DNA of 64,000 bases, taken from the NCBI RefSeq assembly GCF_001194135.2, contig NC_068983.1, positions 61,301,060-61,365,059 on the forward strand. Reading direction: 5' to 3'. Positions 596 to 59,370 of this stretch are shown piece after piece. Below the pieces are notes generated by a model that was given only the letters and a program-made list of their open reading frames with translations, was not told the origin of the DNA and searched no databases. This stretch comes from Octopus bimaculoides. Lineage: Eukaryota. The first letter of the stretch is position 1. Each line of letters opens with the position of its first letter. The translations under genes were made by a program, and so were the position numbers.

Positions 596-632
<37 letters not shown>

Positions 633-5204: not shown

Positions 5205-5410
5205 AAGGTAGCAAGCTAGCAGAAATGTTATTACACTGGGTGAAATGCTTAGCAGTAATTCATCCATCTTTATGTTCTGAGTTCAAATTCTGCCGAGGTT
5301 GACTGCCTTTCGGGGTCGATAAATTAAGTATCAGTTGCATACTCAGGTCAATCTAATCGACTGGGACCCCTCCCCAAAATTTCAGGCCTTGTGCCTAGAG
5401 TAGAAAAGAA
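5205..5410 (+). mobile_element. tRNA-derived SINE (second family)
   Basis: B-box-like GAGTTCAAATTC followed by CCTTTCGGGGTCGATAAATTAAGTA. Degenerate copies near 2040-2200 and 34000-34180 on the minus strand. Confidence 0.65.
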
Positions 5411-6164
5411 TACTTGTTCTGCATGGAATTAATATAATCCTCTGTCATTCTTGCCATCAGAAATGTATTGGACCAGAGAGTGATACATTGGGAGTCCATG
5501 AGAAATGATGCTCTTGTTCACCATTGGTGATACAAGTAAAGATTACAATGTTACTAATTACCTTTTTTGACTTTTCTCATTTTTGTTTTTAGACAACACA
5601 TTATGGTAGATATCATGACAGCTTTACAATCTTCTCATAAATGTAACAACTTCACAATTGCACTAGTTTTTTCCACCCACAAATTTGACAACAAAGAATG
5701 TAGATAACTGTAGCAAATCAGAATATTATTAATAGAACATTACAATTTTTATGTAATGTTTTGTATTACTGCATATGTTATAAGATTGTTTTCATATCTT
5801 TGATCTATGATTGTAGTTAAATATGTTTTCTGTTACAATAATAATAATAATATGAGCCACTCAAAATATGTTATATCTTATAAAGATATGTTGGTACAGT
5901 GGAAACTTAAAGGGAAAAGTAGAGTTGCATTTAAGTAGTTCAAAAGAATTCTTCAAGTGCATGAAACGTATCAAGTTTCAATGAAGGTCAAATATCCAAA
6001 GCCTGGATTAATAATTTAATGTTTACTAATGTGAAATAATTGTGAAAGGAATTGTGGGATTAAACAATGTCATTTGATTTATCATAAAAATATAATATTC
6101 AATATAGCTGTCCAGTTACTTATTTTTTTAAAGCTTGACTCCAGTTACTTATAATTTTTTTAAA

Positions 6165-6465
6165 GCTTGGTACTTTTTCGATCAGTCACTTTTTGCTGAA
6201 CAGCTAAGTAACAGGAATGTAAACAAAAGCAACACAAGTTGTCAAGAAGAGGTGGATGACAATTACATATACAAAGACACATAGATATATGCATATGTAT
6301 GATGGGCTTCTTTCAGTTTCTGACTACCAAATTCACTCACAAGGCTTTGATCAGCTTGAGGCTATAGTAGAAGACACTTGCCCAAGGTGCTACACAGTAG
6401 GACTGAACCTGGAACCAAGTGGTTGGGAATCAAGCTTCTTACCAGACAGCCACACCTGTGCCTAT
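6165..6465 (-). mobile_element. tRNA-derived SINE (first family)
   Basis: Minus-strand GGTTCAGTCCTACT B-box and shared GTCTTCTACTATAGC core. Related copies at ~157-330 (+) and ~4940-5090 (+). Confidence 0.75.
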
Positions 6466-7324
6466 AAACTGACAATGTTTAGGTAAGTTATTATTGTACT
6501 GATAGAAGATCTTTTTAAATCACTACAGTTTGAATGCTATATTTGCTAGGTTTATGTATTATTACTTGAACTTATGAATCTTTATTAAATATAAGGCTTG
6601 AATAATTGTCCAATCTGTAAGGCCCTTTAGTTTCTGCGTTTAGTCCCAAACTGAACAAAATGCATACAAGCATGGTAAATATAACAATTTTGTCAAGATC
6701 AAACCATTCTGAATATAGCTGTTTAGGAGTATTGAAGATGAAATCAGAAGTCAAACAAATTATAGATACATTCAAGTTAATAAATGCTTTAAAGCACTGT
6801 TTATACCAGCTTCCCTAAACTATTAATATTGGATGAGCAACAGGTTTAGATATTTATCTGAATTGTTAGAGTAAATAGTTTAATGCTATAATTAACCACT
6901 TACATTGAAGAGTGAATTAATTGCTTTTTCAGTTAAGTTTATTTCGCACAGTAAAATAAAGTTTCATGTTTGACTGAATTCATGACCTATTTGTTACTAG
7001 CCTATTTAACAGCCTCAATTGTTAATTTCTTTTTATTAATTCTTAAAAAAAAAAATTATGTACCTTAGAATTTAATTTCAGTTTATACCATGTATACATA
7101 ATATACTCCAAAGTATAGGATAAAATTTTATTTATTACTCTTCAACATAACTGCAAATTTAACTTAATTCAAATGTTTACTTGATTAAATAGATATTCTT
7201 TCTACCAAAAGATTTCAATGGATGTAGGATTTAATCTTAAACTCCAAATACCCTAACTCAAATTTCTAGAAAACTTATACCTATGTAGTTTTAAAGGTAT
7301 GATGATAATAAAATGGAAGGATTT

Positions 7325-7360
7325 TGCATGCGCTGGCAAAATGTTTGGTAGTAGCATGCA
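7325..7360 (-). promoter_or_regulatory. Two (U)GCAUG Rbfox-type motifs downstream of the 7453-7525 exon
   Basis: Minus-strand TGCATG at 7355-7360 and GCATG near 7326-7330. Confidence 0.4.
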
Positions 7361-7452
7361 ATTAGATATCATTTGGTGCATAATGGAATGTTTGCATCCA
7401 AAGCGGAAGCTAGAAGCAATAAAACAAAAATGAGTTAGTCTTTAATTCTTAC

Positions 7453-7525
7453 CAAACTCCTCTAGTACAAATATGCCTCCTTTCTGTGTGAAACATTTCT
7501 TGACACGACATAGCTCAATAAAGAA
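7453..7525 (-). CDS. MADD: MADD exon (FFIELCRVKKCFTQKGGIFVLEEF+G), 73 nt
   Basis: Matches vertebrate VFIELNHIKKC...GVFVLEEF. Splice sites tttttattttcag and gtaaga. Confidence 0.95.
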
Positions 7526-8169
7526 CTGAAAATAAAAACGAAGCAACTTAAAGCTGTTGATTCACAAAAGTATACCACTTGTGGACAAAGAGGATAAGTG
7601 GCTCACACTGACTAACTGAACTGAACAAAACAATAGCTCTACAAACTACATATAAGCAATATAAATCTAGCAGATGCAAATGAAAGGGAAAAATAGGTGC
7701 CAAGATGAAAATTAGAATTTATTTAATCAACACCTTGATTAATGTGGATATTTAAATGTAATTAAATTGGATTTAAAATTTATACCCACTATAACCAATG
7801 TATTTTGCTGAATATAGGATTTTATCAAATCAGGTCATATAATATTTTTCCTGACAATTTGCAAGGTGCTAGCAAAGCAATCACAACTTCTAACATTGAT
7901 TCAACTCAGGTGTAAAATAAGCATACAAACAACATACCAAATTAAAATAAACTGAAAAGCATAGAGAGGGCAAGCACTAGTTTGAAACAAAAATGATTTT
8001 CAGTAATAGTTGTGTTCATACACATAACAATCCAAATAAATGTCTCTATGAATTAAAAAAAAAATTGGGAGAAAATGTAGACAAGAAGCAAAAGTGTGTG
8101 GAGTAAAAAGAAAGGGTAAGTTGTAGAGTGAAGAGTGATCTACAAATGACAGACACCATAAGCCATTAC

Positions 8170-8178
8170 CTCAAAATC
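8170..8178 (-). CDS. MADD: Candidate 9-nt neural microexon GATTTTGAG (DFE), phase 0-0
   Basis: About 35 nt of almost pure pyrimidines, TGC at -12, gggggcag|GATTTTGAG|gtaatg. In frame between LANSK and FFIEL. Confidence 0.65.
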
Positions 8179-9247
8179 CTGCCCCCAGCAGCCGATACAG
8201 CGGGATGAAGGGAGAGAAAGAGAGAGAAAAAAAAAGATAACATATTAACCAGCATATTAGCAACAACATTAGCTGCAACATTACAGTAACGTAAGCCCAG
8301 CTTGTTAAGGTGCTTATATCTTCCTTCAGATTTTCAAAAACAAAACATCAATTGACGATCAAACAAAAGACATAGAGAATTGAAAGCATAATTGAATGCA
8401 AACTAATTTTTGAATTAGTAATAGGGTAAGGAATTTATCTCCGATACTGATTAGGCATAGAATCTAGCTTCTCTGAAAAATCAGGCTAAATGATCAAGAT
8501 ATAATGAAAGAGAGATATTAAGATTCATAATAAATGTAATATTCTTTATCAAGCCAAAACAGCTGTGAAAGAAGTATTTGCACTTAAATGAAAGAACAGT
8601 AGACAGTTTTTTGATTATGTATATTTGTAAAAAGTTGGAGATTATAAAAATAATACTGGGCTTAAAAGAAACTTAAGAAAATCTTAGCTGATGTACAATA
8701 GTAGACACTAGTTAAAAACAAACTATAATGCTTCATTGGAGTTGTCTCTTCTGCTTATGGATTTTAGAGTTTTAAACACCATCCGAGGAAGTTTTTGAAA
8801 ACTATTTGCTAAAATAATCTCAGCTGAAGTTGTTTTTCAACTCATCACTGCACATATGCATGACTCAACTGTATTTACATTTAGAACACAGGATTCTCTT
8901 GAAGTATTTTCCCTCAGCCAAATTACTGATATTTATAATCAATCTCTCTCTCTCTCTCTCTTGCTATATGTGAGTGTGTGTATGTGTGCATGTGTTGTGT
9001 GTACACGTGCATATAAATATCTACACACACACACATATATACACAGGTACGCACACATATAGTGAGAGAGAAAGTTAACAGGATAGATTGAAAGAATCTC
9101 TATATAGAAAATACTTAGCGCTCAAAAGATTTGAACTTACACTTTGAAATCTTTACCAAAGACTAAGTCAGTGGGGTAAATAGAAGCTACAAGAGGAATC
9201 CAGGTGAGCAGATATGGAGACTGGTGTGTGTGTGTGTGTGTATATAT

Positions 9248-10045
9248 ATCATCATCATTGTTTAACATCCGCTTTCCATGCTAGCATGGGTTGGACGATT
9301 TGACTGAAGACTGGCAAGCCAGAAGGCAGCACCATGTTCCAATCTGATCTGGCAGAGTTTCTATAGCTGGATGCCCTTCCTAACGCCAACCACTCTGAGA
9401 GTGTAGTGGGTGCCTTTATGTGCCACCAGCACGAGGGCCAGTCACATGGTACTGGCAACGGCCACGCTCAAAAGGTGTTTTTTANNNNNNNNNNNNNNNN
9501 NNNNNNNNNNNNNNNNNNNNNNNNNNNNNNNNNNNNNNNNNNNNNNNNNNNNNNNNNNNNNNNNNNNNNNNNNNNNNNNNNNNNNNNNNNNNNNNNNNNN
9601 NNNNNNNNNNNNNNNNNNNNNNNNNNNNNNNNNNNNNNNNNNNNNNNNNNNNNNNNNNNNNNNNNNNNNNNNNNNNNNNNNNNNNNNNNNNNNNNNNNNN
9701 NNNNNNNNNNNNNNNNNNNNNNNNNNNNNNNNNNNNNNNNNNNNNNNNNNNNNNNNNNNNNNNNNNNNNCTTGCCTCAACATGTCTTCATAAGCAGAGTT
9801 TAGTGTCCAATGAAGGAGAGATTGGCATGGGTGCCAGTCGTCGGATTCGGTTCAATTTCGATTTCAGATTTCAAATTTACTTGCCTCAACAGGTCTTTGC
9901 AAGCAGAGTTTAGTGTCCAATGAAGTAAAGATACGGATAAGTGAGCAAGCCACACTTCTGGCAGAGGTCCCAGCTTATGCTCTCACTTGGCTTGCTGGGT
10001 CTTCTCATGTACTGCATATTTCCAAAGGTCCCGGTCAGTAGTCAC
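9248..10045 (-). mobile_element. RTE 3' UTR/tail copy, interrupted by an N gap
   Basis: (CAT)n, GGTTGGACGATTTGACTG, GATGCCCTTCCTAACGCCAACCAC. Confidence 0.85.
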
Positions 10046-10659: not shown

Positions 10660-11355
10660 AAGTTTAGCATTAGCTGTGCCTGAGAAGACCCGGCAAGCCA
10701 AGTGAGACCAAAATCCAAGGCCTCTGCCAGGGAAGTAGCCAGCCCACTAATGTGTAACATTCCTTCTTTGGACACTAAACTCCGCTTGCGAAGACCGGTT
10801 GAGGCAAGTGAAATCGAAATCGAACTAAATTTGTAGACTGGCACCCATGCCAACGTCTTCATTGAACACTAAACTCGGCTTGTGAAGACCTGTTGGGGCA
10901 AGCGAAACTGAAATCATGATAGCACCTGTACCAGTAAATCACTAAGAGTGTGATCGTTGCGGGAGCACCAGCTGTCTGGCTTTCATGCCAGTGGCACGTA
11001 AATAGCACCATTTGAGCGTGACCGTTACCAACATCGCCTTCCTGGAACGTGAAAAGACATTCGAGCGAGTTCGTTGCCAGTACCGCTGGACTGGCCCTTG
11101 TGCAGGTGGCACGTAAAATACACCATTTCGAGCGTGGCCATTGCCAGTACCTCTTGACTGGCCTTCGTGCCGGTGGCACATAAAAGCACCCACTACACTG
11201 TAGGAGTGGTTGGCATTAGGAAGGGTATCCAGCTGTAGAAACTCTGCTAAATCAGATTGGAGGCTGGTGTAGCCATCCGGTTAACCAGTCCTCAGTCAAA
11301 TCATCCAACCCATGCTAGCATGGAAAGCGGACGTTAAACGATGAGGATGATGATG
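10660..11355 (+). mobile_element. RTE 3' UTR/tail copy
   Basis: Sub-repeats GGTGGCACGTAAAA; ends CCCATGCTAGCATGGAAAGCGGACGTTAAACGATGA. Confidence 0.85.
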
Positions 11356-12373: not shown

Positions 12374-12712
12374 CAGACCTATCTCTCTGACCTCACACAT
12401 CAGCAAGGTCATGGAACGAATAGTCAGAAGAAAACTAATCGCCTTCCTTGAAGAAAATGACTTGCTGCCTGACACCCAACATGGTTTCCGACCAGGAAGA
12501 AGCTGCCTGACTCAGCTCTTACAACGCTATGACTGGGTGCTGAAACAGCTACTTAACCACTCAAATGTGGAAGTGATATATCTTGACTTTGCAAAGGCCT
12601 TTGATAAAGTCGATCATGGAATGATATGTCACAAACTGCGTGATCTCAGCATAGTTGGAGAATTGGGAGAATGGCTTCATGACTTCCTGAAGGATAGAAG
12701 TCAGGTGGTAGT
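12374..12712 (+). mobile_element. CR1/L2-group LINE reverse transcriptase fragment
   Basis: RPISLTSHISKVMERIV...QHGFRPGRSCLTQLL...IYLDFAKAFDKVDHG, open frame. Confidence 0.9.
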
Positions 12713-29916: not shown

Positions 29917-30023
29917 CTTGCTGTTAGCTAGAAGAAACCCAATACCATCCATGCACACCTGGAGTAGCCCTCCTTGTCCAGACCTGAGATCTTGTACAGG
30001 AAATTCACCGCCAATGTCAGGCC
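29917..30023 (-). CDS. MADD: MADD exon ([36 protein letters not shown]), 107 nt
   Basis: Matches [23 protein letters not shown]. Splice sites aaatttcag and gtaagg. Confidence 0.96.
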
Positions 30024-33394: not shown

Positions 33395-33467
33395 CTGGAA
33401 CTTTACCATTATTTCGAGCGGCAGCCTTGTCCATAGTTTCTTTTACACAAAAATACAGTTCCCGGCA
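33395..33467 (-). CDS. MADD: MADD exon (CRELYFCVKETMDKAAARNNGKVP+G), 73 nt
   Basis: Matches CRELYYCVKDSMERAAAR. Splice sites aatatcag and gtaggt. Confidence 0.95.
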
Positions 33468-34450
33468 CTGATATTAGAAAACAACTATATAAGTAATTTT
33501 TAAATCACAGCTGAATATTGTGGAATATATTTACATTATATTTATAGGGTAATATAACAATTATACCAAATATTTTGCACAACCAGTGTAGATGCTGAAA
33601 TGTTTTAATTAATTTGACATATCTGAAAATGTGTCTCATTACTGCTAGATGTTTGAAACAAAAAAACATGTAGCAATAAAATGTGATAGAAATAGAGATC
33701 AAGATATATTAAAGTAGTTTTTTCATGAGTTTCAATGTATAATATCTGTATCTCAGCAGAAACATAAAAAAAATCTCAGTAGGTTTTTGAATTTATTGTT
33801 ATTTTTCTCATAATTTCTTTATCGTAGAAGTAAGAAGCCGTAATATTCATAACTCTCCAAAAGCATTTTTTGGTTTAAGTGAACTGCATCTCTTGAAAAT
33901 TGAAACCAGTCAATGTCAATTCTTAAGGAGTTTAACTTTTGTTCTACAACCATATCTATGATATAAATATTGTGATTTCTTCTTATATCTTTTCACTACC
34001 ATATTGGGGATTCTTTACATAGACATGAAGTCACTACTTTGTAGTATAGTTGATGCAGCCAACTCCAAGATATCACTGATCCTTATTTTATTGACTTAAG
34101 AAAGACAAAGTCAACCTTGCAAAATTTAAACTTAGATGAAACTATGAATACTCTGGTGCTCTTATGTATCTATCAATCCACTGCATTGATAATGGTTTCT
34201 AAGGGGCCAGGAAGTTTGAAGAAGTGATGAAGAAGATCTGCCCACTATTTGACTGGTAAACAAGTGTTATAATTCTTTCTGCTCTAATGCCTAAGGAAAA
34301 TAATACAGTATGTCATCTCTTTTATTAATTGGATGAGTTGAATTATAGTTAGAGTTTTTTTTTCCATCAAGTGCTTTTAATCAATCCTTATATTTGTTAC
34401 ATTTGTGGTACATATAAAAATAAAGAAAACTATTTACTGTTAAGTTTTAC

Positions 34451-34615
34451 CTTTTTAGTATAGAACTGATTAAGATGTACGCGTTCACCATATTTTCGCC
34501 AGAGACATAAAACTTTGGTTTTTGGGCAATAAGTCATGTTGACCAGCTTCTCATACCACCATCGATCACAAATTGCTCCTGTAACACTGCGTAGGATAAT
34601 GCAGTCATCGCATAC
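34451..34615 (-). CDS. MADD: MADD exon ([55 protein letters not shown]), 165 nt
   Basis: Contains the highly conserved [22 protein letters not shown]. Splice sites ctattatag and gtaaaa. Confidence 0.97.
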
Positions 34616-35464
34616 CTATAATAGAACATGAGACATTTAACTGAATTAAATAGTTTACAGAGCTAACATTTCAAACAACAAATCAAAGTAAATTTATGGC
34701 AGACTGGATTAAAAAGCTTAATAACACCTGTTAATCACTCCTCCCTCAATCACCTCTGCATATCCCTGCCTTCTTCCTATCATAATCTTATTTCTTCCAC
34801 TCCTATCAGTCCTGTTGTCACTGTTCTTTCTCTCCAGTCATTTTTTCCAGTTACTTGTACAGAGTATGTCTTAATTTATTGAATACTCTCTATACCTACT
34901 TTTATTCTCCTATCCTTACTTATACCTATTTCTGTCATTATTGTTCTCCTTTCCAAATTCACATTAACTGTGAACAAAATCCCTCTACCACCTATGGTTC
35001 ACACTGTTAAGTAGCTGGCTTCTATTTGGTGTTTCAATGAGACTCCACATAATGATTACAGCACAACATACTTGTATTTGCTAGTGAAAGATGTAAATAT
35101 TACATAATTTATGATATTAAAAAAATACAAACTAAATTTCCAGTTTTATTCTGTTTTGAACCTACATTGTGTAAATTATTCAAATGTAAAAAATAGCAAA
35201 AGCAAATCAGAGGACAATTTATGTTTAATACTTGATTGGAATTTGATTATACATAGATTTACATGGCGTTCTAAAGCTTTGGTTGACTGTTATGCTAAGT
35301 CATTTGAGATAGCAATTCTTCAATAAATAGGTACATAAAAATATGTTCACACACATACACATTTTCAATACTATTTTTGTAGCAAATAAAAATCCAATAT
35401 ATCTAATTTTGTATGTAGAGTATGAACAGATTTTAAAAGTCTTACAATGACAATATCTATAATA

Positions 35465-35895
35465 CAGGTCGTCCATCAACTTACAACCTATCTGGCTTAT
35501 GACCAATCGAAGCGCTAGCTCCCAGCAACAATAATAGATAGTCCAGTTGAAATCTAATGGGTTTAATTTCTCAGAAATTAACCCGTCTATGGATGATGTC
35601 AGCTAACAAACACTTCCCCTAGGTTCGGTAATTGATCGCCACTGTGTTGGATGACTATCCTGTTGTGGAGACATCGAGGCAACCTTGAATTCGTTTATAA
35701 GATGACTGCTTGAGACTCTGAAATTTTTGACTAATGCCAGTATAATAGTATAATGCAGAATGCTGTGTGTGAGTTTTACTTGAAAATGTACCTTAAGAAT
35801 ATAAAAATACAAAACAAAGCTATGTAGGCCTATAAGCGGCCAACTTACAACCAGTCAGTCGGAACCAATTGTGGTTGTAAGTCAACGACGACCTG
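35465..35895. mobile_element. Tigger/pogo-type MITE, 431 bp
   Basis: TA-CAGGTCGTCCATCAACTTACAACC ... GGTTGTAAGTCAACGACGACCTG-TA. Confidence 0.85.
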
Positions 35896-36172
35896 TACTA
35901 CTTAAAACCTTACCCAACTTAAAACAGAGAAAGAAGTAGCTCACATAAGGAATTTTAAAAGTTATAAAATACTCTGAAGATTTATGAGAAATCTTTTGTA
36001 TTTTGTGCTATTCAAATTTCAAGATGACATTTTTCTTGTAGTTATTAAATTTATTGTGTTCATTAAAATTTGCTGGAAAAATTGAATGGAAGATAATTGA
36101 CATTATTATATCACTGTATTTCATTGAAACAAAGCCAGATCATTATGTGTTTCTATATCATATATGGCTTAC

Positions 36173-36280
36173 CTCCATAAACAACATATCCCCTGTATTG
36201 TCACTGCCCCAATGTACAGTGAATGACTGTTTCTGCATGAGTCTGCTGCCCATGGGTTTCAGATCAATATCATTGCCATT
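36173..36280 (-). CDS. MADD: MADD exon ([36 protein letters not shown]), 108 nt
   Basis: Matches MADD [26 protein letters not shown]. Splice sites attccag and gtaagc. Confidence 0.95.
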
Positions 36281-36689
36281 CTGGAATTAAAATAGAAAAG
36301 GTAATTTTATAACGGTAAAATGTTTAAATTATATTTGAAATTTACAATAAAATTATGAAGTCATGAATAACTGATACCACATTAAGTGAAAAATTCAAAT
36401 CCTCTACTTTCTGAATAGCTCTTAATCTATACATATCTGGATGACATAACAGCTATTGTTTCAAATTTGAATACTCACAAGTATTAGTTCCCATCATAAC
36501 CAAGATTATCACCTCTCTTTCTAAAATGCATGTTAGTACATTTAAACTTATTCTGATTTTAGAAACCAAGCAAGCTTTTTATTCTTAATCTTACACTCTT
36601 AATCTCTTCTTTCTCCCTTTTGACAACTTATTAATGGTATCTGATGAACTGTTCGAATCTGAAAATAACACTTCAAGGAGATATCCTTT

Positions 36690-37800
36690 TCCCTCCCTTA
36701 TTTATAAATGGTATTTTTCAGTAACAGTGTAAGATTTTGAGAAGCACCTTTCAGATAAAAGATTTTGATCTTGGTTGCAGGAAGCTCTTTAAATGTGTCT
36801 ATAATGAAGACATCCCAGTTAAGCTGCCCATCTTAGCTAGGATGTCCTCATGTGGACTCTGTTCACCTCTCATCTCTTAGAAAATTTCCTGTTAGACTAT
36901 TCCATTACAACTTCTGTTAATGGGTTTATCTTTGGCCTACATTCTATCGACTCTGATGTACCTCAATATTCAGGGTGTCACTTTTTCTGACATATATTGA
37001 CCAATTTGCTGTTACTTTTAATGGCATTCTCCATTGCATATGACTACACTCTATATGCACAGAAATAAATCATGTCTAATCTGCATGACATTTATAAACA
37101 AATTCAAAAGCATACTTCAATGGGGACATGGCAACCTAGTCTTGTTCATGAGCATAAAAACACAAATCCTACAAAAACCAAGTAAACAGTTAGTTTTGTG
37201 CACTATCCTACACAAACATGTAGAAAAAACACAAGAAAAGTCCTCAAATAGGAACAGATGCTTAGCTTCATAATCCATGGTGATCTTTATTTAAAATTAA
37301 GACTATATCACAAACAAGGCTTCTGCAAAACTAAAATCACTTATTACTGATCAGTTGCTGACCCTCTATAAGGTTTAAGACCTACATTAGAGTACCGCTT
37401 ACATATTTGGGATAGTGCTCTTGCTACACATATACAAACATCCTACATCACATTCAAAATACGAGGATTCAGCCACTTGGTAAAGATTCACTCACCAAAA
37501 ACCTACAAACACTGTTTCACAGACACAACATTTCTTTTCTTAACCTTTCTTCTGCTTTTTCATTGGTTTTAGTCTTTTAAAAGAGCTGGATGCATATCAC
37601 CTATACACTGCCTCACCAAATCCACCTGCCTCGCTTCTCTTTATAATAGTTATCTCAAGTTCTCAAGATCAAGTGCCATGTCTCACTCCTCAGATTCTGT
37701 ACCAAACATTGCCCAATGGTTCCTCTCAATCCTTTGCAATTTCTGTATTTTTCTAACAGGTACTGATAATATTCAAACTGAACATTAGTCACTTTGATTT
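36690..37800 (+). mobile_element. Old CR1-like LINE remnant
   Basis: Degenerate DVPQYS..LFLTYIDQ (GVPQGS-like) and LYK..RPTLEYRLHIWDSA. Confidence 0.55.
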
Positions 37801-38738
37801 CACTAGAGTGGGAGAGTTTAAAAGAGTAAAGTTCTTTCTTCTCTGACTAAAAAAAAGAAAAATGGGATAACTAACTAGAGCTGTGAATATATGCAACTGT
37901 ATTCTCCACTCCGACCAATGTAGGAATTCTTTCAAACTACAGCACCATAATTCTTCTCTTTGACATTATCATTACATAATTAAATTCCTTCAATCTTACC
38001 TATTTAAAACACCAGAAAACTAGATTATTTGAGATCTACTGATCTATGCAATACAAATTTACTTTTAATCTAAGAACTATGTTGAAATTATGGTTTCTTA
38101 ATACATGAGCATAGCCTTTAAAAGAAGTGTAATATCCAAACCTCTTGGTCAACTCCTTTAAAAGAGTTTGGGAAAAGAACTAATCACTTGTTCTGAGCCT
38201 TTCTATTAGATCTACTCAAGCAGAGCTGAGCTAGTCTGTTCTTCAACAAAAACAATAGTTCTTAACATTTCGACATGTTTTGAATAGCATTATTTCAAAT
38301 CTTAATCTTAACTCTTGCTCTAAATAGTTTTTGACCTTTCCTCTATCTTAAATATCCATTACTACACTGTACTGATCTCATATATGATTTGATAACTTCT
38401 TTTGATTTCTGGTACCCAAAATCATACTCATCAATCAATAAAACCCACTTTACTGAAAATATTCAATATCTGGACCATTGTTGATTTGTATTCTTTCTCT
38501 ACTTCATTACAGTTAAGAAAATCAATCTTTCTGCTTTTCACTACCTACACTAGTTCTTCAAACCAAGTGGTGAAACAAAGTTAGTTTTGAAGAAGACATT
38601 AAATAACCAACAATAAATACTTTTAAAATGAATGTTACTTTATGCAAAGTTATTACTGTGAGAATATTCAGTTGACATCTTTTATTAGGGTTTATTATAG
38701 GTTAAAATGTGGAGAATTCCCAAATTTTGAAAACTTAC

Positions 38739-38955
38739 CAATTTATTAATTTCATCTAAAAGGTTATTGACATCTTGACTGTATTGGAGGCCAATGTGAG
38801 ATTTACCAAGCAATCGTCTAATTTTTTTCTTGATTTCTGCTTTCTTTACATCCATCATTACCATAAACCCAATATGATTATACAACATATCAGACAATAA
38901 TTTATCTTCATCATGTTCTAAACGTTTTTTTTCTGAATCTCCAAGTGAATTGTAC
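38739..38955 (-). CDS. MADD: MADD exon ([20 protein letters not shown]...[28 protein letters not shown]), 217 nt
   Basis: Matches MADD RLEDDEDRLL...VRRLMGKSHIGL (so-called death-domain region). Splice sites ttccttcag and gtaagt. Confidence 0.97.
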
Positions 38956-38993
38956 CTGAAGGAAAAAATGGTAACTTTAATATATGCAGTAAG

Positions 38994-39030
<37 letters not shown>

Positions 39031-39114
39031 ATATAAAAAACCCCCTATATAAAAGAATATGAATATAAAGGTATACTAAAATATAAAATAGCATAATAGA
39101 ACTATCTTAATTTT

Positions 39115-39570
39115 GCCTCATTCACCTGATTAACTATACAGGTGACTAGGCTATAGCTGACACTGCCAGATATTTTGAGCATCTCTGCACTGATTCCTGA
39201 TGGGCCGGGGGCTTTCCCTGTCTTCATACTCTTGATCACTTTATCTACCAAGGTACTGTCAATTAGGATAGCTGGTCCCTCTTTTGGGTCGACATGCTGC
39301 AGACTCTCTTCCTCCCATTCATTCTCTTTATTAAGCAACCTTTCATAGTGGCGTCTCCAAATCTCTCTCTTTGCAGCCTCGTTTAGTGCAAGTGAGCCAT
39401 CATCCATGTGGACACATTTCTCTCCTACGACATCACGATTCTCTCTCACACAGTCTTGCAACACAAAATACTTCAAGTCTTTGGTCTTCACGGCGCAGAA
39501 CATTGGCAAATATTTTCTTATCTGCTTCCCCTCTGGCTAAATAAATCTGTCTCCTAGCTTCCCTTCTGCT
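39115..39570 (-). mobile_element. RTE ORF fragment upstream of the RT core
   Basis: WRRHYERLLNKENEW...KTGKAPGPSGISAEMLKISG; homologous to 61770-62000. Confidence 0.9.
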
Positions 39571-40021
39571 GATTGATATTAATGATGCAGTAGAATCAGG
39601 AATGAAAAGTGGCAGAAGCTCAAGAAATTGTTGTCTTTACAAACAACAAAAATGTTTCCTAACAACAGTCAGATGACAAACATTTGTCATGAATGTGAAG
39701 TATCATGGTAGTGAGGCATGAGAATAAAGTACTGACTATCAATGAAACTGAAGGGAATAAGTGAACTGAAGTCAGATTCAAACATAACTGAGTGGTTGAA
39801 TCAGTAATGCTTTGCAATCTTCAGAAGTATTAACCATGACTGTCATATGAGGAAAACTGAGAGAGAAATAATCAAGAACTAGTAACAGTTGAATTAAAAG
39901 GAAAAAATCATCAAAGAAGATAAAGAGAATTTGCTAGAGCCAAATGTCACATAATTGATCTAGCCTAGAAGACAAATAAATAAAATGTGAATGGCAAGAG
40001 GAAGCAAAAGTAGCTACATAC

Positions 40022-40142
40022 CTTTCCATCATTTCACCTGGTCCTTGATCCATCCCAATAATATCTCTTTCCTGGGCAACAGCATCTAAAAACATATCCT
40101 CCCAAAATTGCATTGAATCCCATAAACGACTGCGTTCTTTAC
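40022..40142 (-). CDS. MADD: MADD exon ([39 protein letters not shown]), 121 nt
   Basis: Near-identical to the MADD/AEX-3 motif WDQMQFWEDAFLDAV...GMDQGP. Splice sites tcttgtag and gtatgt. Confidence 0.97.
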
Positions 40143-40807
40143 CTACAAGATATCAGAATAGAAAAGTGATAGACTTGTATTCCATAAATTCATCATTGTA
40201 ATTAAGCATATATGTGCCAAGGGATGACAAACTTGTTCTTGACAACTACAATGCAAGGATTGGAATTAATCATAGCCTGATGGATTAAGAAAAGTGAATT
40301 TGAACAGTTTCCAATTGCTCTAATTTTGGCAAAGCAGGACTTGATTATTCCCATACTTACACTTGATACCCATTGAGAAAGGAACCTAAATGTACATGAG
40401 ATCTAAAAATTGGTATTTGACAGACTTTGTATTTGTGTGCTCTCATGATATGCAATATGCATACAAAGTGTATGCACTGAATGTTGCAGAATGCTCAACA
40501 GTCTATTATATGGTTAGAGCAAAGTTTGAATTTGTTAAACATAAGTGTTTTGGAGATGGCAGGAGTCTGAATTCCATTGATGTACCCCATCTCAAAGTAG
40601 AAGTTGTGTATGAACTGAAGGTAAAATTGGCCGGGTTTTGAAGATAAGACTTCTGAGGTTTATAGCAAATATACTAGGTTATAAGGAGTAAAGAAACCAG
40701 GACTGGTTTGATAATAGCATTAATTTGAAGCAAAACTCAAAGCCCCCCCCCCACAAAGCACATTGTTTATTAAGCTCTTACAAATTAATCTTACAAGATA
40801 ATCTTAC

Positions 40808-40964
40808 CAATTAAACCTTCAAAAAGATATGTTTTCCCTGTCTCTGGACTAGGTAGTGGGGATGTATTAATCATCTTTCCATCATGATAACGAAATCCAG
40901 CACTTAAATTACTTTTGGTACTCCAGATACTTGATGATCGACTACGTCTGTGGTAGTTCACCAT
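40808..40964 (-). CDS. MADD: MADD exon ([30 protein letters not shown]...TYLFEGLI+G), 157 nt
   Basis: Acceptor ctattgtag, donor ATTG|gtaaga. YLFEGLIG matches the MADD YLYEGLLG motif; phases match both neighbours. Confidence 0.92.
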
Positions 40965-41334
40965 CTACAATAGCAGTACAAGCAATATCATCACACAATC
41001 AACAATAGAAACAAATGGAGAAAAGTAATACAATACATCCACCTAATTCACGAGAGCATATATAGTCAGTAGATACAAAACCAAAGGAGATGATGTATAT
41101 TCTAAATGATCTATCTTAAAAAAGTTACTTACTGTATCATTCATTTAACATCTTGATTTTCTATAGCAGTGTCATTCGTTTATTCTAAGAATTTGAAGAA
41201 ATACTGAATATACAATAAAGCTAATCTATAGTATTTAAATGCTTCTTCATTGGGGAAATTCTTTCCAATTAGAAAAGTTTTGCTTAGTAAAAATGAAACC
41301 GACATCTGTTGTGCAATTGAGTAATTTAACCATA

Positions 41335-42005
41335 GGCATAAGAGGCAACAGATGTGGTGTGCAAGAGAGATGAATGTGCTGGTATGGCCATGTGATGCGT
41401 ATGGATGAGGACAGCTGTGTAAGCAAGTGCCAATCCCTAACTGTGGAGGGAACTTGTGGTAGAGGTAGACCCAGGAAGACATGGGATGAGGTGGTGAAGC
41501 ATAATCTCCAAACTTTGGGTCTCACAGAGAAAATGACTAGTGACCAAGACCTTTGGTGATATGCTGTGCTTGAGAAGACCCATCAAGCCAAGTGAAATCG
41601 CAGTCATGGCTGATGCTGGTGTCACATAACTGGTACCTGTGCAGGTGGAATGTAAAAATCACCTTTCAAGCAATGAGCCTCGGTGGTTGAGCTCCTTTTG
41701 AATGTTGGGCCTCACAGAGGGAATGACCAAGACCTTTGACATTATGTTGTGCTTGAGAAGAAGAACCATCAAGCCAAGTAAAACTGCAGTTGTGGCAGAT
41801 ACCGGCGTCATGCAATAGTCACCTGTGCCAGCGGCACATAGAAGCACCCATTACACTCTCAGAGTGGTTGGCATTAGGAAGGACATCCAGCCATAGAAAC
41901 CACGCCAAAATAGACAGGAGTCTGGTGCAGCCTTCCAGCTTGCCAGCCCTGGTCAAACCGTTCAATCCATGCCAGCATAGACAACGGACGTTAAATGATG
42001 ATGAT
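41335..42005 (+). mobile_element. RTE 3' portion (end of ORF, UTR and tail)
   Basis: WYGHVMRMDEDSCV...GRGRPRKTWDEVV; ends in (GAT)n. Confidence 0.88.
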
Positions 42006-43253
42006 AATAACCAGGTCTCACCTCTGCTCAAAAGCAAAAGGCTGTTTAGTCAGAAATTATGATGAACGGATTTATATTTTTAATTCCTGTATCAGAAAGA
42101 AGCCTGACATTCCTATAATTATTATAATACTTTTGTTTTCTATCATTCACAAATCACATCATTTTCTTTCTCCTACTGTCTTACATCCAGTACAATAGTT
42201 CACATAGTTACTTTATTTTGGTGGGTGGGGAGTGATATAGAAGCTATCATTTAATATTCAGTGTAAATCCACTTAAAGTTAAGTATTCTGTATTGTATTT
42301 TTTTAAACTTATAGTTTATAGATACTCTGAAAAAATTAACTTTACCTACATTCTCTACTATAAATATCATCCATGTGCTGTACCAATGAGAGATAAAGAT
42401 ATTGAAACATTACATAATATTTAATATTGAAACATATTATTTAATATAAATATGTAATATTTAACTTTAAACCTTCGCTCTAAGTTTCATACAAATAAAA
42501 GGAAAAATATCTTCAGCTGGAATTAGACTTTCCTATGCTTTATATTGAACATCTCTAAAGAAACAGTGAATTAACATACAAAGTATATGGGAGATCAAAC
42601 TAAAAAAACAGTTATAATTGATTTTAACGAGCTGATACATAAATAAACTATACTAAAAGAATAAATATGGTGTCTGTGATGGACCTATTACAATAAAATC
42701 TGTGCAGAATTAGAATTTAGGAAATTTTACATGAGAAAATAAAACTTTTTTGGCAAGAAACTTTACCCTGTCTACATTTTTCCTACTGTTATCAACTAGC
42801 AGAAATTTAAGTTGAATGTTAACTATATCAACTACATTAGTAGTCTCGGAAGGCCTAGAAGCTATGAAGACTGGAACTCTTCATTGTTTAAAATATATAG
42901 CAAACAATGAATATAGTAGTTTTTGTAGCATAAACTCATTTTTACTTATGATAATGTAGAAGTGGAATCTCTTATTAGACAATAAAAATAGGCAGTCCTA
43001 AACTATAAATGGTTGTTATATGCTATATTATCAGAAGTTCAACAATTTAACCTCAATCTTTGAGCTTGAAATGGTGAATAATATCAGAAACCTAAACTAT
43101 GACTAAACATTAGGCAAAGGAAAGACCTTTTTCAACTTCAAAATAAATACTTATCCACAGTAAATGGCATCAATTTTAAATTATTTGTTGTAAACAAGAT
43201 ATTTTTGTTATATTTTTCTAAGAAATTAAAAAACAACAAAAATCCCAACTTAC

Positions 43254-43711
43254 CCCAGAAAGTTCCATCTCACTATCTGACACAGTATTCCTGACCAAAT
43301 GATGGCTAACCTTTGGTTTCTGGCGCCGTTCCTCCTCAGGTTGATTATCAGAGCTACTGCTTACTAATGTGCTGCCATCAGAGACTTCTGAATCAATGCT
43401 GTTAACCTTATTTTTCTTCCGAGCTTTAAGTAACTCTTTATTGCGTACAAGATCATGAAGAATATCACTTTCAGTATCTGCAGACTGTTTATCTGGTTCA
43501 GCACCAGTCACAACAATGTCACAAGATTTGACATTCTCAGAAGCAGAGTCAGTTGTATTTGTTTGATCAGCACTGTGACTTTTATCACTTTCTGATTGTT
43601 CTTCAGCTTCTCCAGCATCAGTATCTCGATAGGCATCTTCACTTGTAGTTTCACCAACTGATGCAATTTCAATGTTTTCAAATTCTTCTCCATTGATAAT
43701 GACGGGAGAAC
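43254..43711 (-). CDS. MADD: MADD exon, acidic Ser-rich linker (GSPVIINGEEF...VRNTVSDSEMELSG), 458 nt
   Basis: Open frame in the ORF track, acceptor ttcaatag, donor GGG|gtaagt. The end resembles the vertebrate MADD motif RGTLSDSEIE as I recall it. Confidence 0.85.
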
Positions 43712-46700
43712 CTATTGAATTCAATAAAAACTATTTATATTCAAAAGCAGAGATGTTATTATAAAGCATGGCAATTAAATTCAGAGAAGACTGTCACTAT
43801 TGCAAAAAACACTGGTTGCAAATGTGGTTGCTCTTTAAATGAAATAAGATTCTTAAAAGTTACATAATAAATGTTAGTGATAACAAAAACAAAAAAAGTA
43901 ATTCTACATACTTCCACTATTCATTAAAAATTGAGAAAACATGGTTGATACTTTCTACTCAAACATATGTTACATTTACTTTCCTCACAAATATAACATC
44001 CATTCTAAATGAGAAGGGCTGAAGTGCTAATTTAAAATTTAAATTGTTGGTACTTATTTTTAATTATCTAAAAGAACACCTTTATTAACCAAGATGCATT
44101 GAACAAAATACAATATCTCACCAACTTCACTGAATCTTCAAATAAAACTATTTTAGCATCATTCAAAGAAATTCACTGTTGCTTAGGAAATACTGAATTT
44201 TAGATGTCTTTGCTCAAGGAATGGTATAAGAGTTAAAATATAAAATTTTAGCAAGAAAATATAATAACAATGCAAACTAGTTGAACAAATCAAATAATTC
44301 CTATTTTAATTTTCTTCTACATTTTAACTTCTATGGAAAGAATATACAAAAGTTTTTGCTGATTATAAACAGATGCCCTGATTGCAGACATTCCTTATTT
44401 TGCAAAAATTTCCGTGAATACATTACAGGAATGTGATAAAAAAAATTTGGTAATTAAATTGATGCAATTAATAAACAAAAGAATAACTACAATCCAAGCA
44501 TGTTTTTTTTTATTTAGTGAAGAACTCTTCTAAAATATGATAATAAGCAGACGATCTTAATAAGAAGTATCAAATTTTTTATTTTACATGTAAAAGCAAC
44601 ATGAAAACAGAGAAGGTGTTTCTATAAACTAAACAAAAGAAATTATTTTCATAAAGATATTAACATTTAAATTTTGTAAGTCTTGAGATTTGACAAGTTA
44701 TCTTTAGAAATTTCATTGAATATTTGGAAAGCAAGCAAGCCTAACTTTGCCATACAAACCTCCATTTAAGAAAGAGAAAAGAGTTAAAGAAACAAGAGTT
44801 ACTAAATAATAAAAATTTGGTAGAAATAAAAAAAATATCTTGAAATTAAGACATTTTATTTGTTAAGATTTTAATGTAATGCATAATATTTAATTTTCTG
44901 ACTAGGCAAAAATTTGGTGCTAACTACAAGGAGAACGCTTTAACAAGGTTACTTAGCTGAATCAGCAAAAATGACTTGTCGCAGTTGAGTTGAAAAATAC
45001 TCTTAACATTTTAGACACTTACACATGCATAATTCAACACACATACATGTAAAGATTAGCAGTCCAATCACTCAGCTGGTTGGCAAAAATCATAGAGCAG
45101 TTAACCAAAAACTTTTAATTTTGACACTACCTTCCAAATTAAAGTATTCAATCAACTTTGCATTTTACTACTTCAAGGTTAGTAAAGTTAAATATTGACA
45201 ATATATGATTGTTATATATCTATATACCCTTATCTACAAAATCTTATCTTATATTTTGTGAAAAGACATCAATAGCTAAAATTAATGTTCTAGCAAACCA
45301 AAGAAAAAACCATAAAAACCTCAGTAAGTATTTAGGATTGAATTCTCTTTTCCTTTTCATGACGGATAAAATGTTTTGCAAGAGGCAATGTAAAAATATA
45401 AATAGACTGATATTTCTAAAATACTTTCATAAGCATCAGTACTGATAATGTGAATTAAAACAGAAAAATTATAGGCTGAAATGAATTTGAAACATAAAAT
45501 AATCAAGTGAAATGGTGGAAATTTCTAACTGAGACAGAGGACAAAATACTAATTCTTTACATACAGAATGAGCTAAAGCTGGGAAATTTTAAAAAGAGGA
45601 AATTTGGCAGAAATATATATTGGCTTCAGGTGAATTAAACAAGAAATGAAAGCAACAATGCTAAATCCCAGACTGGCCAAAAATAAATGTAAAAAATAAT
45701 AAAAATGTTCTTTCATTATAGAGAAAAGAAATGCAAAGAACATTGTTTCTAATTGACAACAACATAACAGTAACAGCTATATGAACTATGCCATTTTTAA
45801 GAAGTTCCTGAATCACAAACGTCTCGCAAATAAAAGAAGAGTAAACTACCTACACTAAGTCACATAGATTTATGTTCAAAGGAAAAAAGGATAGAAACAA
45901 ATAAAAAAACAACAGAAAACACCATAATAATAAGCTATAAAGTGCTTATGAAATATTGAATGGATTGAAACTAAAATAAAAGCACAAGAAAATAATCTAA
46001 AAATTGGTTTTAGTTAATAAATAGATAAAAACATTAGAAAACAATTTTAAATCAGTTAAAAACATTATTATCAATCTAATTCATATTGTAATTAAAAATT
46101 TATAACAAAGAAATTTAAAAATAGAAATGAACAAATAAAATATTTAGCTGGATAACTATTAAAACTTTGTCATAGAAAATTGGATTGGATTGATGGAATT
46201 GTTTGTGACACATTAGTAGTAATAATGTCTTAATTCATTTCAGTCTTCCCTTTAACTCTTTAACTGTATGAAGGGGTTTGTAAATTAAAAACAAATTTAT
46301 TTTGCTAGAACATGAAGATGAGTAAGAGGTGCCAACTACATCAACCAATTGAATGAGCTGGATATGTTATGTGGATTTTTAACAATCAATAAATGATAAT
46401 GGAGTTAGTTATCAAAATATCAATCAATGCTATAGGGATAATTAAAAAAATGTAAAGATGAGTGATGATGTAAAATCAGAAAATGAAAGTTCATGGTGCT
46501 CAGGAGAGTTGCAAGCTAAGAAAAAGGAAAGTGACAGAATGGGCCAAAGAAAAAATGCTTTCTAGAACTAGCTAAGATTACTATAAATATAATTTGATTC
46601 ACTTGATAAATAAATTTAAGATCGAAATAACTAAGAAACAAAAAGAAATTTTAAATAATGTAAGACATATGTGATAGATAATAAAAGAAAAATATAAATC

Positions 46701-59079: not shown

Positions 59080-59137
<58 letters not shown>

Positions 59138-59300
59138 TATATATATATATATATTATATAAATACACATGTATATATATACATACACATATAGATATATA
59201 TACATATATATATATATACATATATATACACACATATATAAATATACATGTACATATATATATACACACATACATATAAATCTCTCTCTCTCTCTCTCTG

Positions 59301-59370
<70 letters not shown>

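What the first reader, a model, noticed from the sequence alone, without database searches (positions are those of the whole stretch)
8170..8178. 9-nt DFE microexon with a typical neural-microexon signature
Seen on the minus strand: a ~35-nt (T/C) tract, then ccgctgtatcggcTGCtgggggcag|GATTTTGAG|gtaatg. It adds Asp-Phe-Glu in frame (LANSK-DFE-FFIEL). Established: SRRM4/eMIC-type neural microexons have a strong pyrimidine tract, a UGC about 10 nt upstream of the AG and frame-preserving lengths. It lies at the far end of a ~21.7-kb intron and would be missed by standard annotation. A role tuning a synaptic Rab3 GEF is inference.
Basis: partly seen in the sequence, partly recalled or inferred. Interest (0 to 1): 0.7.

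Follow-up and report, generated by a model that had tools for sequence, protein, structure and literature searches.

The report
Ancient 9-nt MADD neural microexon
The 9-base segment is a genuine, deeply conserved mini-exon of the synaptic-vesicle gene MADD. It adds Asp-Phe-Glu to a surface loop of the protein, and it matches a neuron-specific microexon already described from fish to insects, so the call is correct but not new.

Summary
On the minus strand, cag|GATTTTGAG|gtaatg (8178-8170) lies in phase between two MADD exons (…LLANSK | FFIEL…). A 31-nt pyrimidine run, a UGC 10 nt before the AG, and two CUAAU branch-point matches lie upstream.

It is not a chance match. The same exon (GAYTTYGAG, or GATATTGAG) sits 600-960 nt before the orthologous downstream exon in five other invertebrate genomes, including the bivalve Tegillarca granosa. 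Only the cag-exon-gta island aligns there. Annotated MADD isoforms carry an insert at exactly this junction:
- DFE in a wasp (11 of 14 isoforms)
- DYE in Artemia
- ESE in a sea urchin
- RMEK in a tunicate
- ERK in a mammal

Published zebrafish RT-PCR primers place the known 9-nt, neural, srrm3/4-dependent madd microexon in this same intron. A 2026 preprint names a 9-nt MADD microexon as one of only two bilaterian-ancestral neural exons.

A model of the sea-urchin protein puts the insert in the β3-β4 loop of the C-terminal PH-like domain.

Inclusion, neural specificity and eMIC dependence in the source species could not be tested. Verdict: real, interpretation supported, already known.

The parts
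8170..8178 (-). 9-nt microexon GATTTTGAG, encoding Asp-Phe-Glu, phase 0/0
   Evidence: Sequence read. Identical or synonymous exon at the orthologous place in L001, L002, L003 and L007; GATATTGAG in L004/L005. DFE insert at the same protein junction in Venturia canescens MADD isoforms.
8179..8180 (-). 3' splice site AG (cag|)
   Evidence: CAG is invariant in the 5-species alignment A1.
8188..8190 (-). UGC motif 10 nt upstream of the AG
   Evidence: A UGC lies within -20..-3 in the window and all four other species tested; joint chance is about 2.8e-4. L007, scanned later, has one at -19. The role of UGC in SRRM3/4-dependent microexons comes from the literature.
8207..8237 (-). 31-nt uninterrupted, UCUC-rich pyrimidine tract. 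It ends 29 nt before the exon, leaving a non-pyrimidine spacer that holds the UGC.
   Evidence: 9 UCUC/CUCU words within -80. Only 7 pyrimidine runs of 20 nt or more occur on this strand of the whole window.
8256..8272 (-). Two CUAAU matches to the branch-point consensus, at -94 and -82. They lie inside the 92-nt AG-exclusion zone, just downstream of the previous AG.
   Evidence: A CURAY match upstream of the pyrimidine tract is also found in L002, L003, L004 and L007. Branch-point use is inferred, not shown.
8164..8169 (-). 5' splice site GAG|GTAATG
   Evidence: GTA is invariant in A1. The site is only moderately strong, lacking G at +5.
29917..30023 (-). Upstream MADD exon (G)PDIGGEFPVQDLRSGQGGLLQVCMDGIGFLLANSK, the start of the C-terminal PH-like domain. 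Donor is AAG|gtaagg.
   Evidence: It is 75-86% identical to PF25328-bearing ORFs P0002-P0023.
7453..7525 (-). Downstream MADD exon FFIELCRVKKCFTQKGGIFVLEEF(G). Acceptor is ttttcag|; donor is G|gtaaga.
33407..43712 (-). Further upstream MADD exons (boundaries ±2 nt): ~43712-43245, ~40928-40803, ~40140-40021, ~38957-38739, 36280-36173, 34615-34451, 33467-33407. They cover the Death_MADD and penultimate PH-like regions.
   Evidence: tblastn with ORFs of related loci and with full-length MADD proteins.

Best explanation
Window 8178-8170 (minus strand) is a genuine, alternatively included 9-nt cassette microexon of the MADD (DENN / Rab3 GDP-GTP exchange protein) gene. It is the orthologue of the known 9-nt neural MADD microexon.

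Shown here:
- It lies in the intron that splits the C-terminal PH-like domain.
- It is in phase.
- It is conserved as an island (CAG|GAY-[T/A]TY-GAG|GTA) in otherwise unalignable introns of other invertebrate genomes.
- A 3-aa insert (4-aa in a tunicate) at this exact junction is present in some MADD isoforms and absent from others across Bilateria.

Inferred from published work on the orthologous exon and on the cis code:
- In non-neural cells the tiny exon is skipped. Its 3' splice site is poor: the pyrimidine tract ends about 29 nt from the AG, and the branch point is about 80-95 nt away.
- In neurons the eMIC-domain isoform of the Srrm234 family protein binds the UGC between the pyrimidine tract and the AG. 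It stabilises early U2AF/SF1 recognition, and the exon is included.

Inferred from a model of the sea-urchin orthologue:
- Inclusion lengthens the β3-β4 hairpin loop of the PH-like domain by an acidic-aromatic-acidic tripeptide. This probably changes a binding surface rather than the fold, and so tunes MADD's partner interactions on synaptic-vesicle precursors.
For: 1. Anatomy and phase.

2. Host gene is MADD. PF25328 PH_MADD appears on all hits. Death_MADD and PH_MADD genes lie next to the match in other genomes. Named MADD orthologues were recovered. The Pfam architecture is uDENN-DENN-Death_MADD-PH_MADD.

3. Genomic conservation. The microexon lies 607-955 nt upstream of the orthologous downstream exon in every relative:
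- L001 (Tegillarca granosa): GATTTTGAG at 22396
- L002: GACTTTGAG at 13351
- L003: GATTTTGAG at 17157
- L004/L005: GATATTGAG at 11386/11387
- L007: GACTTTGAG at 10440
. Chance expectation is 3e-4 to 2.5e-3 per intron. Only the cag-exon-gta columns are invariant in A1.

4. Protein isoforms with the insert at this junction:
- Venturia canescens: ...ANSK-DFE-FFVRL in 11 of 14 isoforms; absent in X6, X7 and X14
- a 906-aa JGI protein, P0229: DFE, while its cluster mates P0134, P0231 and P0232 skip it
- Artemia KAK2716366.1: DYE, while XP isoforms X1-X4 skip it
- S. purpuratus XP_011681591: ESE
- Clavelina: RMEK, present or absent by isoform
- Nannospalax MADD X6: HNQ-ERK-VFIEL, against the Ursus form without it
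.

5. Literature.
- The zebrafish madd microexon DreEX0044304 is 9 nt and is listed among neural, srrm3/4-regulated microexons.
- Its RT-PCR primers translate to GGLLQVT and ..ELNHIKKC, and give products of 100 or 91 nt.
- My count of the 91-nt skipped product leaves no other exon between the two primers, so the 9 nt lie in this same intron.
- Mantica et al. 2026 infer a 9-nt MADD microexon to be one of two bilaterian-ancestral neural exons. Their species set includes Octopus bimaculoides.

6. Cis code.
- The window and all orthologous loci share the same layout. A CURAY match lies at -48..-94 (Tegillarca is the exception, with a CUAAC at -21). The pyrimidine tract ends at -17..-29. A UGC lies at -5..-19. 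The AG-exclusion zone is 50-92 nt.
- This is the published signature of eMIC-dependent exons.

7. Structure.
- The AF2 model is of S. purpuratus MADD, built with a 38-sequence alignment. It shows strands 852-856 and 864-868 with ESE at 862-864. Block pLDDT is 86 and 79.
- The best PDB fold matches are tandem-PH proteins.
Against: - There is no RNA evidence from the source species. No spliced sequence containing ...ANSKDFEFFIEL... was found in the protein collection or in the JGI metagenome scan, whose three hits are unrelated.
- The one spliced relative recovered by the first search (P0001) lacks an insert.
- The annotated Capitella, Elysia and Bradybaena proteins also lack it.
- Neural specificity and eMIC dependence rest entirely on other species.
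- The 5' splice site is not strong.
- In Tegillarca the best branch-point match (CUAAC at -21) lies after the pyrimidine tract, so the architecture is not uniform.
- The structural placement comes from a predicted model of a different species' protein with a different tripeptide.
- The window's organism was not identified.
Confidence: 0.9

Rival explanations
1. A real MADD microexon, but in this lineage it is constitutive, broadly alternative, or controlled by factors other than the eMIC domain (for example Nova, Rbfox or PTBP de-repression). It would then not be a neural switch.
For: Tissue specificity was not testable here. Venturia includes DFE in most annotated isoforms, 11 of 14. The published work notes that UGC is not strictly required for SRRM4 response. 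It also notes that eMIC programmes have been almost completely rewired between phyla. The long UCUC tract could equally be a PTB-type silencer (introduction).
Against: The orthologous exon is reported as neural-specific in vertebrates, insects and outgroups, and as srrm3/4-dependent in zebrafish. The eMIC-type cis architecture is conserved in every locus examined. Skipped isoforms exist in every species with several isoforms.
Confidence: 0.12
2. A conserved intronic element that is spliced but not meant to code. It could be a recursive-splicing or 'decoy' exon that helps remove a very long intron and is then itself removed.
For: It lies at the far end of a ~21.7-kb intron, 644 nt from the next exon. 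It has juxtaposed 3' and 5' splice sites only 9 nt apart.
Against: It is equally conserved where the intron is only 1.9 kb (L004/L005) or 2.6-4 kb (L007, L002). Variation is codon-like: GAT/GAC is synonymous, TTT→ATT is conservative, and there are no frameshifts. The tripeptide appears in annotated proteins of several phyla.
Confidence: 0.03
3. A chance AG...GT pair downstream of a pyrimidine-rich low-complexity stretch, that is, a pseudo-exon.
For: The intron holds 50 stop-free 9-nt AG..GT candidates and 432 candidates of 3-27 nt. The genome is AT-rich and repeat-rich.
Against: The same 13-nt pattern occurs at the same relative place in five other assemblies, against 3e-4 to 2.5e-3 expected per intron. 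It occurs once in the window against 0.01 expected.
Confidence: 0.01

Closest known systems
Vertebrate MADD 9-nt neural microexon (zebrafish VastDB DreEX0044304 and its human orthologue; PMC12626424)
   Same: - Same gene and same intron. The published RT-PCR primers sit in the GGLLQV... and ...ELNHIKKC exons that flank the window's candidate.
- Same length (9 nt) and phase.
- A mammalian isoform (Nannospalax MADD X6) carries the 3-aa insert at the identical junction.
   Different: - The encoded tripeptide differs: E-R-K in the mammal, D-F-E here.
- Neural specificity and srrm3/4 dependence are measured in fish but untested in the window's species.
'Bilaterian-ancestral' 9-nt MADD microexon orthogroup of Mantica et al. 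2026 (bioRxiv 10.64898/2026.09.05.749416)
   Same: - A 9-nt MADD microexon inferred to be ancestral to Bilateria and neural-specific in vertebrates, insects and outgroups. The species set includes Octopus bimaculoides and Strigamia.
- My own data reproduce the distribution: a wasp, a brine shrimp, a bivalve plus four unnamed invertebrate assemblies, a sea urchin, a tunicate and a mammal.
   Different: - I could not see their Extended Data Fig. 7b or their datasets. Whether the window's own exon is one of their entries is unknown.
- Their text does not give the sequences.
eMIC (Srrm234 / SRRM3 / SRRM4)-dependent neural microexons in general
   Same: - Length of 27 nt or less and frame-preserving.
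- UGC between the pyrimidine tract and the AG, a long UCUC-rich pyrimidine tract, a long AG-exclusion zone and a CUAAY branch point.
- The host gene acts in vesicle traffic and GTPase regulation, as the zebrafish microexon paper classifies madd.
   Different: Dependence on the eMIC domain is not shown for this exon in any protostome in the material I could read.
APBB1/2/3 6-nt microexon
   Same: It is the only other exon inferred to be a bilaterian-ancestral neural microexon. It is also a tiny in-frame insert, in a signalling adaptor protein.
   Different: Different gene, length and protein context. Not examined here.

Membership tests
MADD 9-nt neural microexon orthogroup (DreEX0044304 and orthologues) | Host gene is the MADD / Rab3-GEP orthologue | tested here: met
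   PF25328, PF23629 and PF26658 on flanking exons and relatives. Named MADD orthologues share 60-94% identity with the window's exons.
MADD 9-nt neural microexon orthogroup (DreEX0044304 and orthologues) | Located in the same intron, that is, flanked by the orthologous exons (...GGLLQV...[NS][KQ] | [FV]FIEL..KKC...) | tested here: met
   for the window. Inserts at the same junction appear in the isoform alignment.
MADD 9-nt neural microexon orthogroup (DreEX0044304 and orthologues) | Length 9 nt, phase 0, no stop codon | tested here: met
   The tunicate Clavelina departs from this with 12 nt / RMEK.
MADD 9-nt neural microexon orthogroup (DreEX0044304 and orthologues) | Actually included in mRNA of this species, as an alternative cassette | not testable with these tools
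   No transcript data for the source species. The feature is met in other species through annotated and assembled isoforms with and without the insert.
MADD 9-nt neural microexon orthogroup (DreEX0044304 and orthologues) | Neural-specific inclusion | not testable with these tools
   Literature on orthologues only.
eMIC / SRRM3/4-dependent microexons | Microexon size (3-27 nt) | tested here: met
   9 nt.
eMIC / SRRM3/4-dependent microexons | UGC motif close to the 3' splice site, between the branch point / pyrimidine tract and the AG | tested here: met
   UGC at -12 from the exon. It is present at -5..-19 in all orthologous loci, with joint chance 2.8e-4 for the five loci tested.
eMIC / SRRM3/4-dependent microexons | Long UCUC-rich pyrimidine tract, long AG-exclusion zone, and a strong upstream branch point (CUAAY) | tested here: met
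   31-nt pyrimidine run, 9 UCUC/CUCU words, AG-exclusion zone of 92 nt (99th percentile), CUAAU at -94 and -82.
eMIC / SRRM3/4-dependent microexons | Inclusion depends on the eMIC-domain protein | not testable with these tools
   Needs knock-down or ectopic expression. Reported for the zebrafish orthologue, which the authors selected for 'strong srrm3/4 regulation'.

The most novel reading that the evidence does not exclude
The exact tripeptide, not just the exon, may be under long-term selection in protostomes. D-F-E is identical in this genome, a bivalve, three further unnamed invertebrate assemblies and a hymenopteran insect. Only D-Y-E and D-I-E (and perhaps E-L-E) variants occur. Deuterostomes carry E-S-E, RMEK and E-R-K instead.

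On this reading D-[FYI]-E is a short acidic-aromatic binding motif displayed on the β3-β4 loop of MADD's C-terminal PH-like domain. It would switch a neuron-specific partner, such as the coupling of Rab3 vesicle precursors to kinesin-3. Its conserved UGC / pyrimidine-tract / branch-point layout would preserve the ancestral eMIC-responsive element, making it a tractable model for the original microexon code in molluscs.
Probability: 0.3. Interest if true: 0.5.

Novelty: already known. Interest (0 to 1): 0.3.

Why it matters
Neural microexon programmes are reported to have been almost completely rewired between flies and mammals (PMC8797185). Exons that survive from the bilaterian ancestor are therefore very rare: two by the latest count, and this is one of them.

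Finding it from raw sequence, at the end of a ~22-kb gapped intron where gene models in related genomes miss it, shows that the splice-signal signature is readable by eye. It also gives a correct annotation for this locus.

The cross-phylum series collected here gives a concrete handle for two experiments:
- The series runs DFE / DYE / DIE in protostomes and ESE / RMEK / ERK in deuterostomes.
- All of these sit in one loop of a PH-like domain with no solved structure.
- One experiment is what this loop binds. The other is whether a mollusc Srrm234-eMIC protein reads the same UGC code.

It does not open a new category.

Tried and rejected
- Spliced transcripts. The first protein search used the spliced query including DFE. 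It returned 23 hits, and only one (P0001) is spliced; that one lacks the insert. So there is no RNA-level support from that collection.
I used the single exon 34615-34445 instead.
- The JGI metagenome scan for DNA encoding K-DFE-FFIEL gave three hits, none related to MADD.
- The C. elegans microexon preprint that mentions 'madd' 18 times concerns madd-4 (punctin), which is not MADD/aex-3. The 'Rab3-GEF microexon' text search gave one irrelevant paper.
- The text search for the vertebrate neuron-specific IG20/KIAA0358 'exon 34' found nothing usable. My recollection that another alternative exon lies in this same vertebrate intron is unverified and is not used.
- The single-sequence AlphaFold model of Capitella MADD was useless: pLDDT 41, and below 50 in the PH region. 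It was replaced by an alignment-based model.
- Species identification failed. The closest relatives are unnamed Logan/ENA ORFs, for example P0204 at 95% identity over the 43.7-43.2-kb exon. Scaffold N-gaps, (AT)n/(ATAC)n arrays and very long introns fit a draft cephalopod-like genome, but that is an impression, not a result.
- The last MADD exon(s) downstream of 7453 were not found in 1-7452. They probably lie outside the window.
- The preprint's supplements are not held.

Full report
**Observation.** Read on the minus strand, window 8300-8120 is ...gctaatgttgttgctaatatgctggttaatatgttatctttttttttctctctctttctctcccttcatcccgctgtatcggctgctgggggcag|GATTTTGAG|gtaatggc.... The nine bases occupy 8178-8170, as stated.
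- The pyrimidine tract is a 31-nt uninterrupted run (8237-8207).
- A UGC lies at 8190-8188, 10 nt before the AG.
- Two CUAAU words lie at -94 and -82.
- There is no AG for 92 nt upstream of the acceptor. That is the 99th percentile of AG-AG gaps in this intron.

**Flanking exons.** Six-frame search places ...GFLLANSK at 29931-29917 and FFIEL... at 7525-7511. The splice sites are AAG|gtaagg and ttttcag|TTC. Both junctions are in phase 0, so the 9 nt add Asp-Phe-Glu in frame. The upstream intron is 21,738 nt but contains four N-gaps totalling 1,587 nt. The downstream intron is 644 nt.

**Host gene.** The flanking exons match ORFs carrying Pfam PF25328, the MADD C-terminal PH-like domain. tblastn with related loci and with full-length MADD proteins maps a minus-strand series of MADD exons from ~43.7 kb down to 7.45 kb. 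These cover the Death_MADD region, the penultimate PH-like region and the final PH-like domain. Full-length relatives have the architecture uDENN-DENN-Death_MADD-PH_MADD and are named MADD in many animals. The last exon or exons are not in the window.

**Is it more than chance?** Inside the window the case is only suggestive.
- The interval between the two exons holds 50 stop-free AG-N9-GT candidates, and 432 of 3-27 nt.
- This is the only 9-nt candidate with a pyrimidine run of that size.

The decisive evidence is comparative. I fetched the DNA around the orthologous upstream exon in other assemblies and located the downstream exon in each. The same microexon is present every time, 607-955 nt before the downstream exon:

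| Locus | Source | Position | Sequence |
|---|---|---|---|
| L001 | Tegillarca granosa | 22396 | tgcAG\|GATTTTGAG\|gtaaat |
| L002 | ENA assembly | 13351 | GACTTTGAG |
| L003 | ENA assembly | 17157 | GATTTTGAG |
| L004/L005 | ENA assembly | 11386/11387 | GATATTGAG (D-I-E) |
| L007 | ENA assembly | 10440 | GACTTTGAG |

.

- The chance expectation for AG-GAY-WTY-GAR-GT is 3e-4 to 2.5e-3 per intron.
- In the window the pattern occurs once against 0.01 expected.
- In a five-species alignment only C-A-G, the exon and G-T-A are invariant, while the flanks do not align. That is the pattern expected for a selected exon in neutral intron.
- The exon is present whether the intron is 1.9 kb or ~22 kb. 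This argues against a device specific to long introns.
- A JGI contig (L008) has a probable divergent version, GAGCTTGAG (E-L-E), but that call is uncertain.

**Is it expressed and alternative?** I have no transcript from the source species. I searched 1.84 billion representative proteins with the conserved exon 34615-34445 and then expanded clusters. This gave isoform sets in which the junction is directly visible:

| Species | With insert | Without insert |
|---|---|---|
| Venturia canescens (wasp) | ...LLFANSK-DFE-FFVRL... in 11 of 14 isoforms | X6, X7, X14 |
| Unnamed arthropod-like, JGI (P0229, 906 aa) | DFE | cluster mates P0134, P0231, P0232 |
| Artemia franciscana | KAK2716366.1, DYE | XP isoforms X1-X4 |
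| Strongylocentrotus purpuratus | ...PQSK-ESE-AFIEL... | none among the isoforms read that span the junction |
| Clavelina lepadiformis (tunicate) | 12-nt version, RMEK | some isoforms |
| Nannospalax galili (mammal) | MADD X6, ...FMHNQ-ERK-VFIEL... | Ursus americanus sequence |

So an optional 3-aa insert (4-aa in the tunicate) at this exact junction exists across Bilateria. The window's D-F-E is identical to the insect peptide.

**What the literature says.**
- A 2025 eLife study (PMC12626424) deleted a 9-nt zebrafish madd microexon, VastDB DreEX0044304. [quoted passage not shown]
- Its RT-PCR primers are GGTGGTCTCCTCCAAGTCAC (GGLLQVT) and TGCACTTTTTAATGTGATTCAGC (reverse complement ...ELNHIKKC), with products of 100 and 91 nt.
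- Counting codons, 91 nt is exactly the distance between those primers with no other exon between them. The fish microexon therefore lies in the same intron as the window's candidate.
- A September 2026 preprint (Mantica et al., 10.64898/2026.09.05.749416) compared 20 species, including Octopus bimaculoides. It states that only two neural exons are confidently bilaterian-ancestral: a 6-nt exon in APBB1/2/3 and a 9-nt exon in MADD.
- The exon is therefore already known. I could not check whether this very locus is among their entries, because the supplements are not held.

**How it most likely works.**
- Published descriptions of eMIC (Srrm234/SRRM3/SRRM4)-dependent exons list several features. 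[quoted passage not shown] A UGC between branch point and AG occurs in most SRRM3/4 targets (10.1101/2024.09.17.613571).
- The window has all of these, and the layout recurs in the orthologous loci. A CURAY match lies at -48..-94, except in Tegillarca, where a CUAAC sits at -21. The pyrimidine tract ends 17-29 nt before the exon. A UGC lies at -5..-19. The AG-exclusion zone is 50-92 nt. A UGC within -20..-3 in all five species first tested has a joint chance of about 2.8e-4.
- My inference is as follows. The distant branch point and the spacer make the 3' site weak, so the exon is skipped by default. A neuronal eMIC protein bound at the UGC then rescues early recognition. This regulator step is inferred from orthologues and not shown here.

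**Effect on the protein.**
- No solved structure covers this domain.
- A single-sequence model failed.
- An alignment-based AlphaFold model of the sea-urchin isoform, which contains ESE, is confident over the C-terminal module, with block pLDDT of 79-92.
- It places the insert (862-864) at the end of the loop between strands 852-856 and 864-868.
- The best PDB fold matches are tandem-PH proteins: centaurin-α1, FARP1/2, BBS5, SPT16 and Rtt106.
- The microexon therefore lengthens the β3-β4 hairpin loop of a PH-like domain by an acidic-aromatic-acidic tripeptide. That is a surface change rather than a fold change.
- Which partner is affected is unknown. A role in tuning Rab3-vesicle functions remains an inference.

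**Rivals.**
- Chance pseudo-exon is excluded by the conservation.
- A non-coding recursive or decoy exon is unlikely. Variation is codon-like, the exon persists in short introns, and the peptide appears in annotated proteins.
- The live alternative is that the exon is real but not neural-specific or not eMIC-controlled in this lineage. Only tissue RNA data can settle that.

**Verdict.** The prediction that annotation would miss the exon is borne out in relatives: the Tegillarca model KUTeg_023588 misjoins after ANSK, and the Capitella, Elysia and Bradybaena models lack the insert. The exon belongs to a described orthogroup, so novelty is low.
- the sequence series across phyla, with D-[FYI]-E in protostomes and E-S-E / RMEK / E-R-K in deuterostomes;
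- the conserved 3' splice-site layout in bivalve-like and other invertebrate genomes;
- the placement of the insert in the β3-β4 loop.

Noticed in passing
window 9485-9769, 11398-12373, 15630-15837, 16480-16597, 59981-59990: Runs of N (scaffold gaps). Four of them lie inside the long intron, so its 21.7-kb length is an estimate and the window comes from a draft scaffold.
   Followed up: yes
window 12374-12827 (+): An ORF emerging from an N-gap encodes a reverse-transcriptase-like fragment (...RPISLTSHISKVMERIVRRKLIAFLEENDLLPDTQHGFRPGRSCLTQLL...YLDFAKAFDKVDH...). This looks like a non-LTR retrotransposon remnant inside the MADD intron.
   Followed up: no
window 39102-39509 (-): A 135-aa ORF (...NEWEEESLQHVDPKEGPAILID...KTGKAPGPSGISAEMLK...) lies in the intron between MADD exons ~40021 and ~38957. 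It resembles the N-terminal part of a retroelement polyprotein. It was not scanned against any library.
   Followed up: no
window 58379-61584 and 63810-64000: Dense (AT)n / (ATAC)n-type microsatellite arrays give long 'IYIYIY' pseudo-ORFs on both strands.
   Followed up: no
window 11060-11185; also 9406-9480 (+) and 18127-18465 (-): A 67-bp unit is present in 1.9 tandem copies (TTCGAGCGAGGCCATTGCCAGTACCGCTGGACTGG...). Similar '...MCHQHEGQSHGTGNG...' pseudo-ORFs occur at two other places. This suggests a dispersed short repeat (SINE-like) family in the intron.
   Followed up: no
L001 (Tegillarca granosa) 5786-6607 and 7585-8879: The intron holds a 49-bp minisatellite of about 17 plus about 27 copies. 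Its unit is a copy of the 3' end of the MADD exon ...VHWGSDNSGDMLFME together with its 5' splice site (GAG|GTATGT). That amounts to dozens of tandem decoy donor sites just downstream of the real one. The window has a single copy, at 36217-36173.
   Followed up: partly
L001 10001-14885 (Tegillarca annotation, P0002 / KUTeg_023588): The deposited gene model is a 59-aa fragment. After ...LLANSK it continues into YFGHLGFERVLSFT, so it misses both the microexon (22396) and the true next exon (23236). The upstream part of MADD is called as a separate gene.
   Followed up: yes
P0244-P0247 (Clavelina lepadiformis MADD isoforms): At the same junction the tunicate has a 4-aa insert (RMEK), presumably 12 nt, that is present or absent by isoform. 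The microexon has therefore changed length in that lineage.
   Followed up: partly
L008 10323-10331 (JGI metagenome contig 3300056788): A possible divergent orthologue, gcAG|GAGCTTGAG|gtataa (E-L-E), has two UGCs upstream. It lies near the 5' end of a 1.3-kb intron rather than near its 3' end. The assignment is uncertain.
   Followed up: partly
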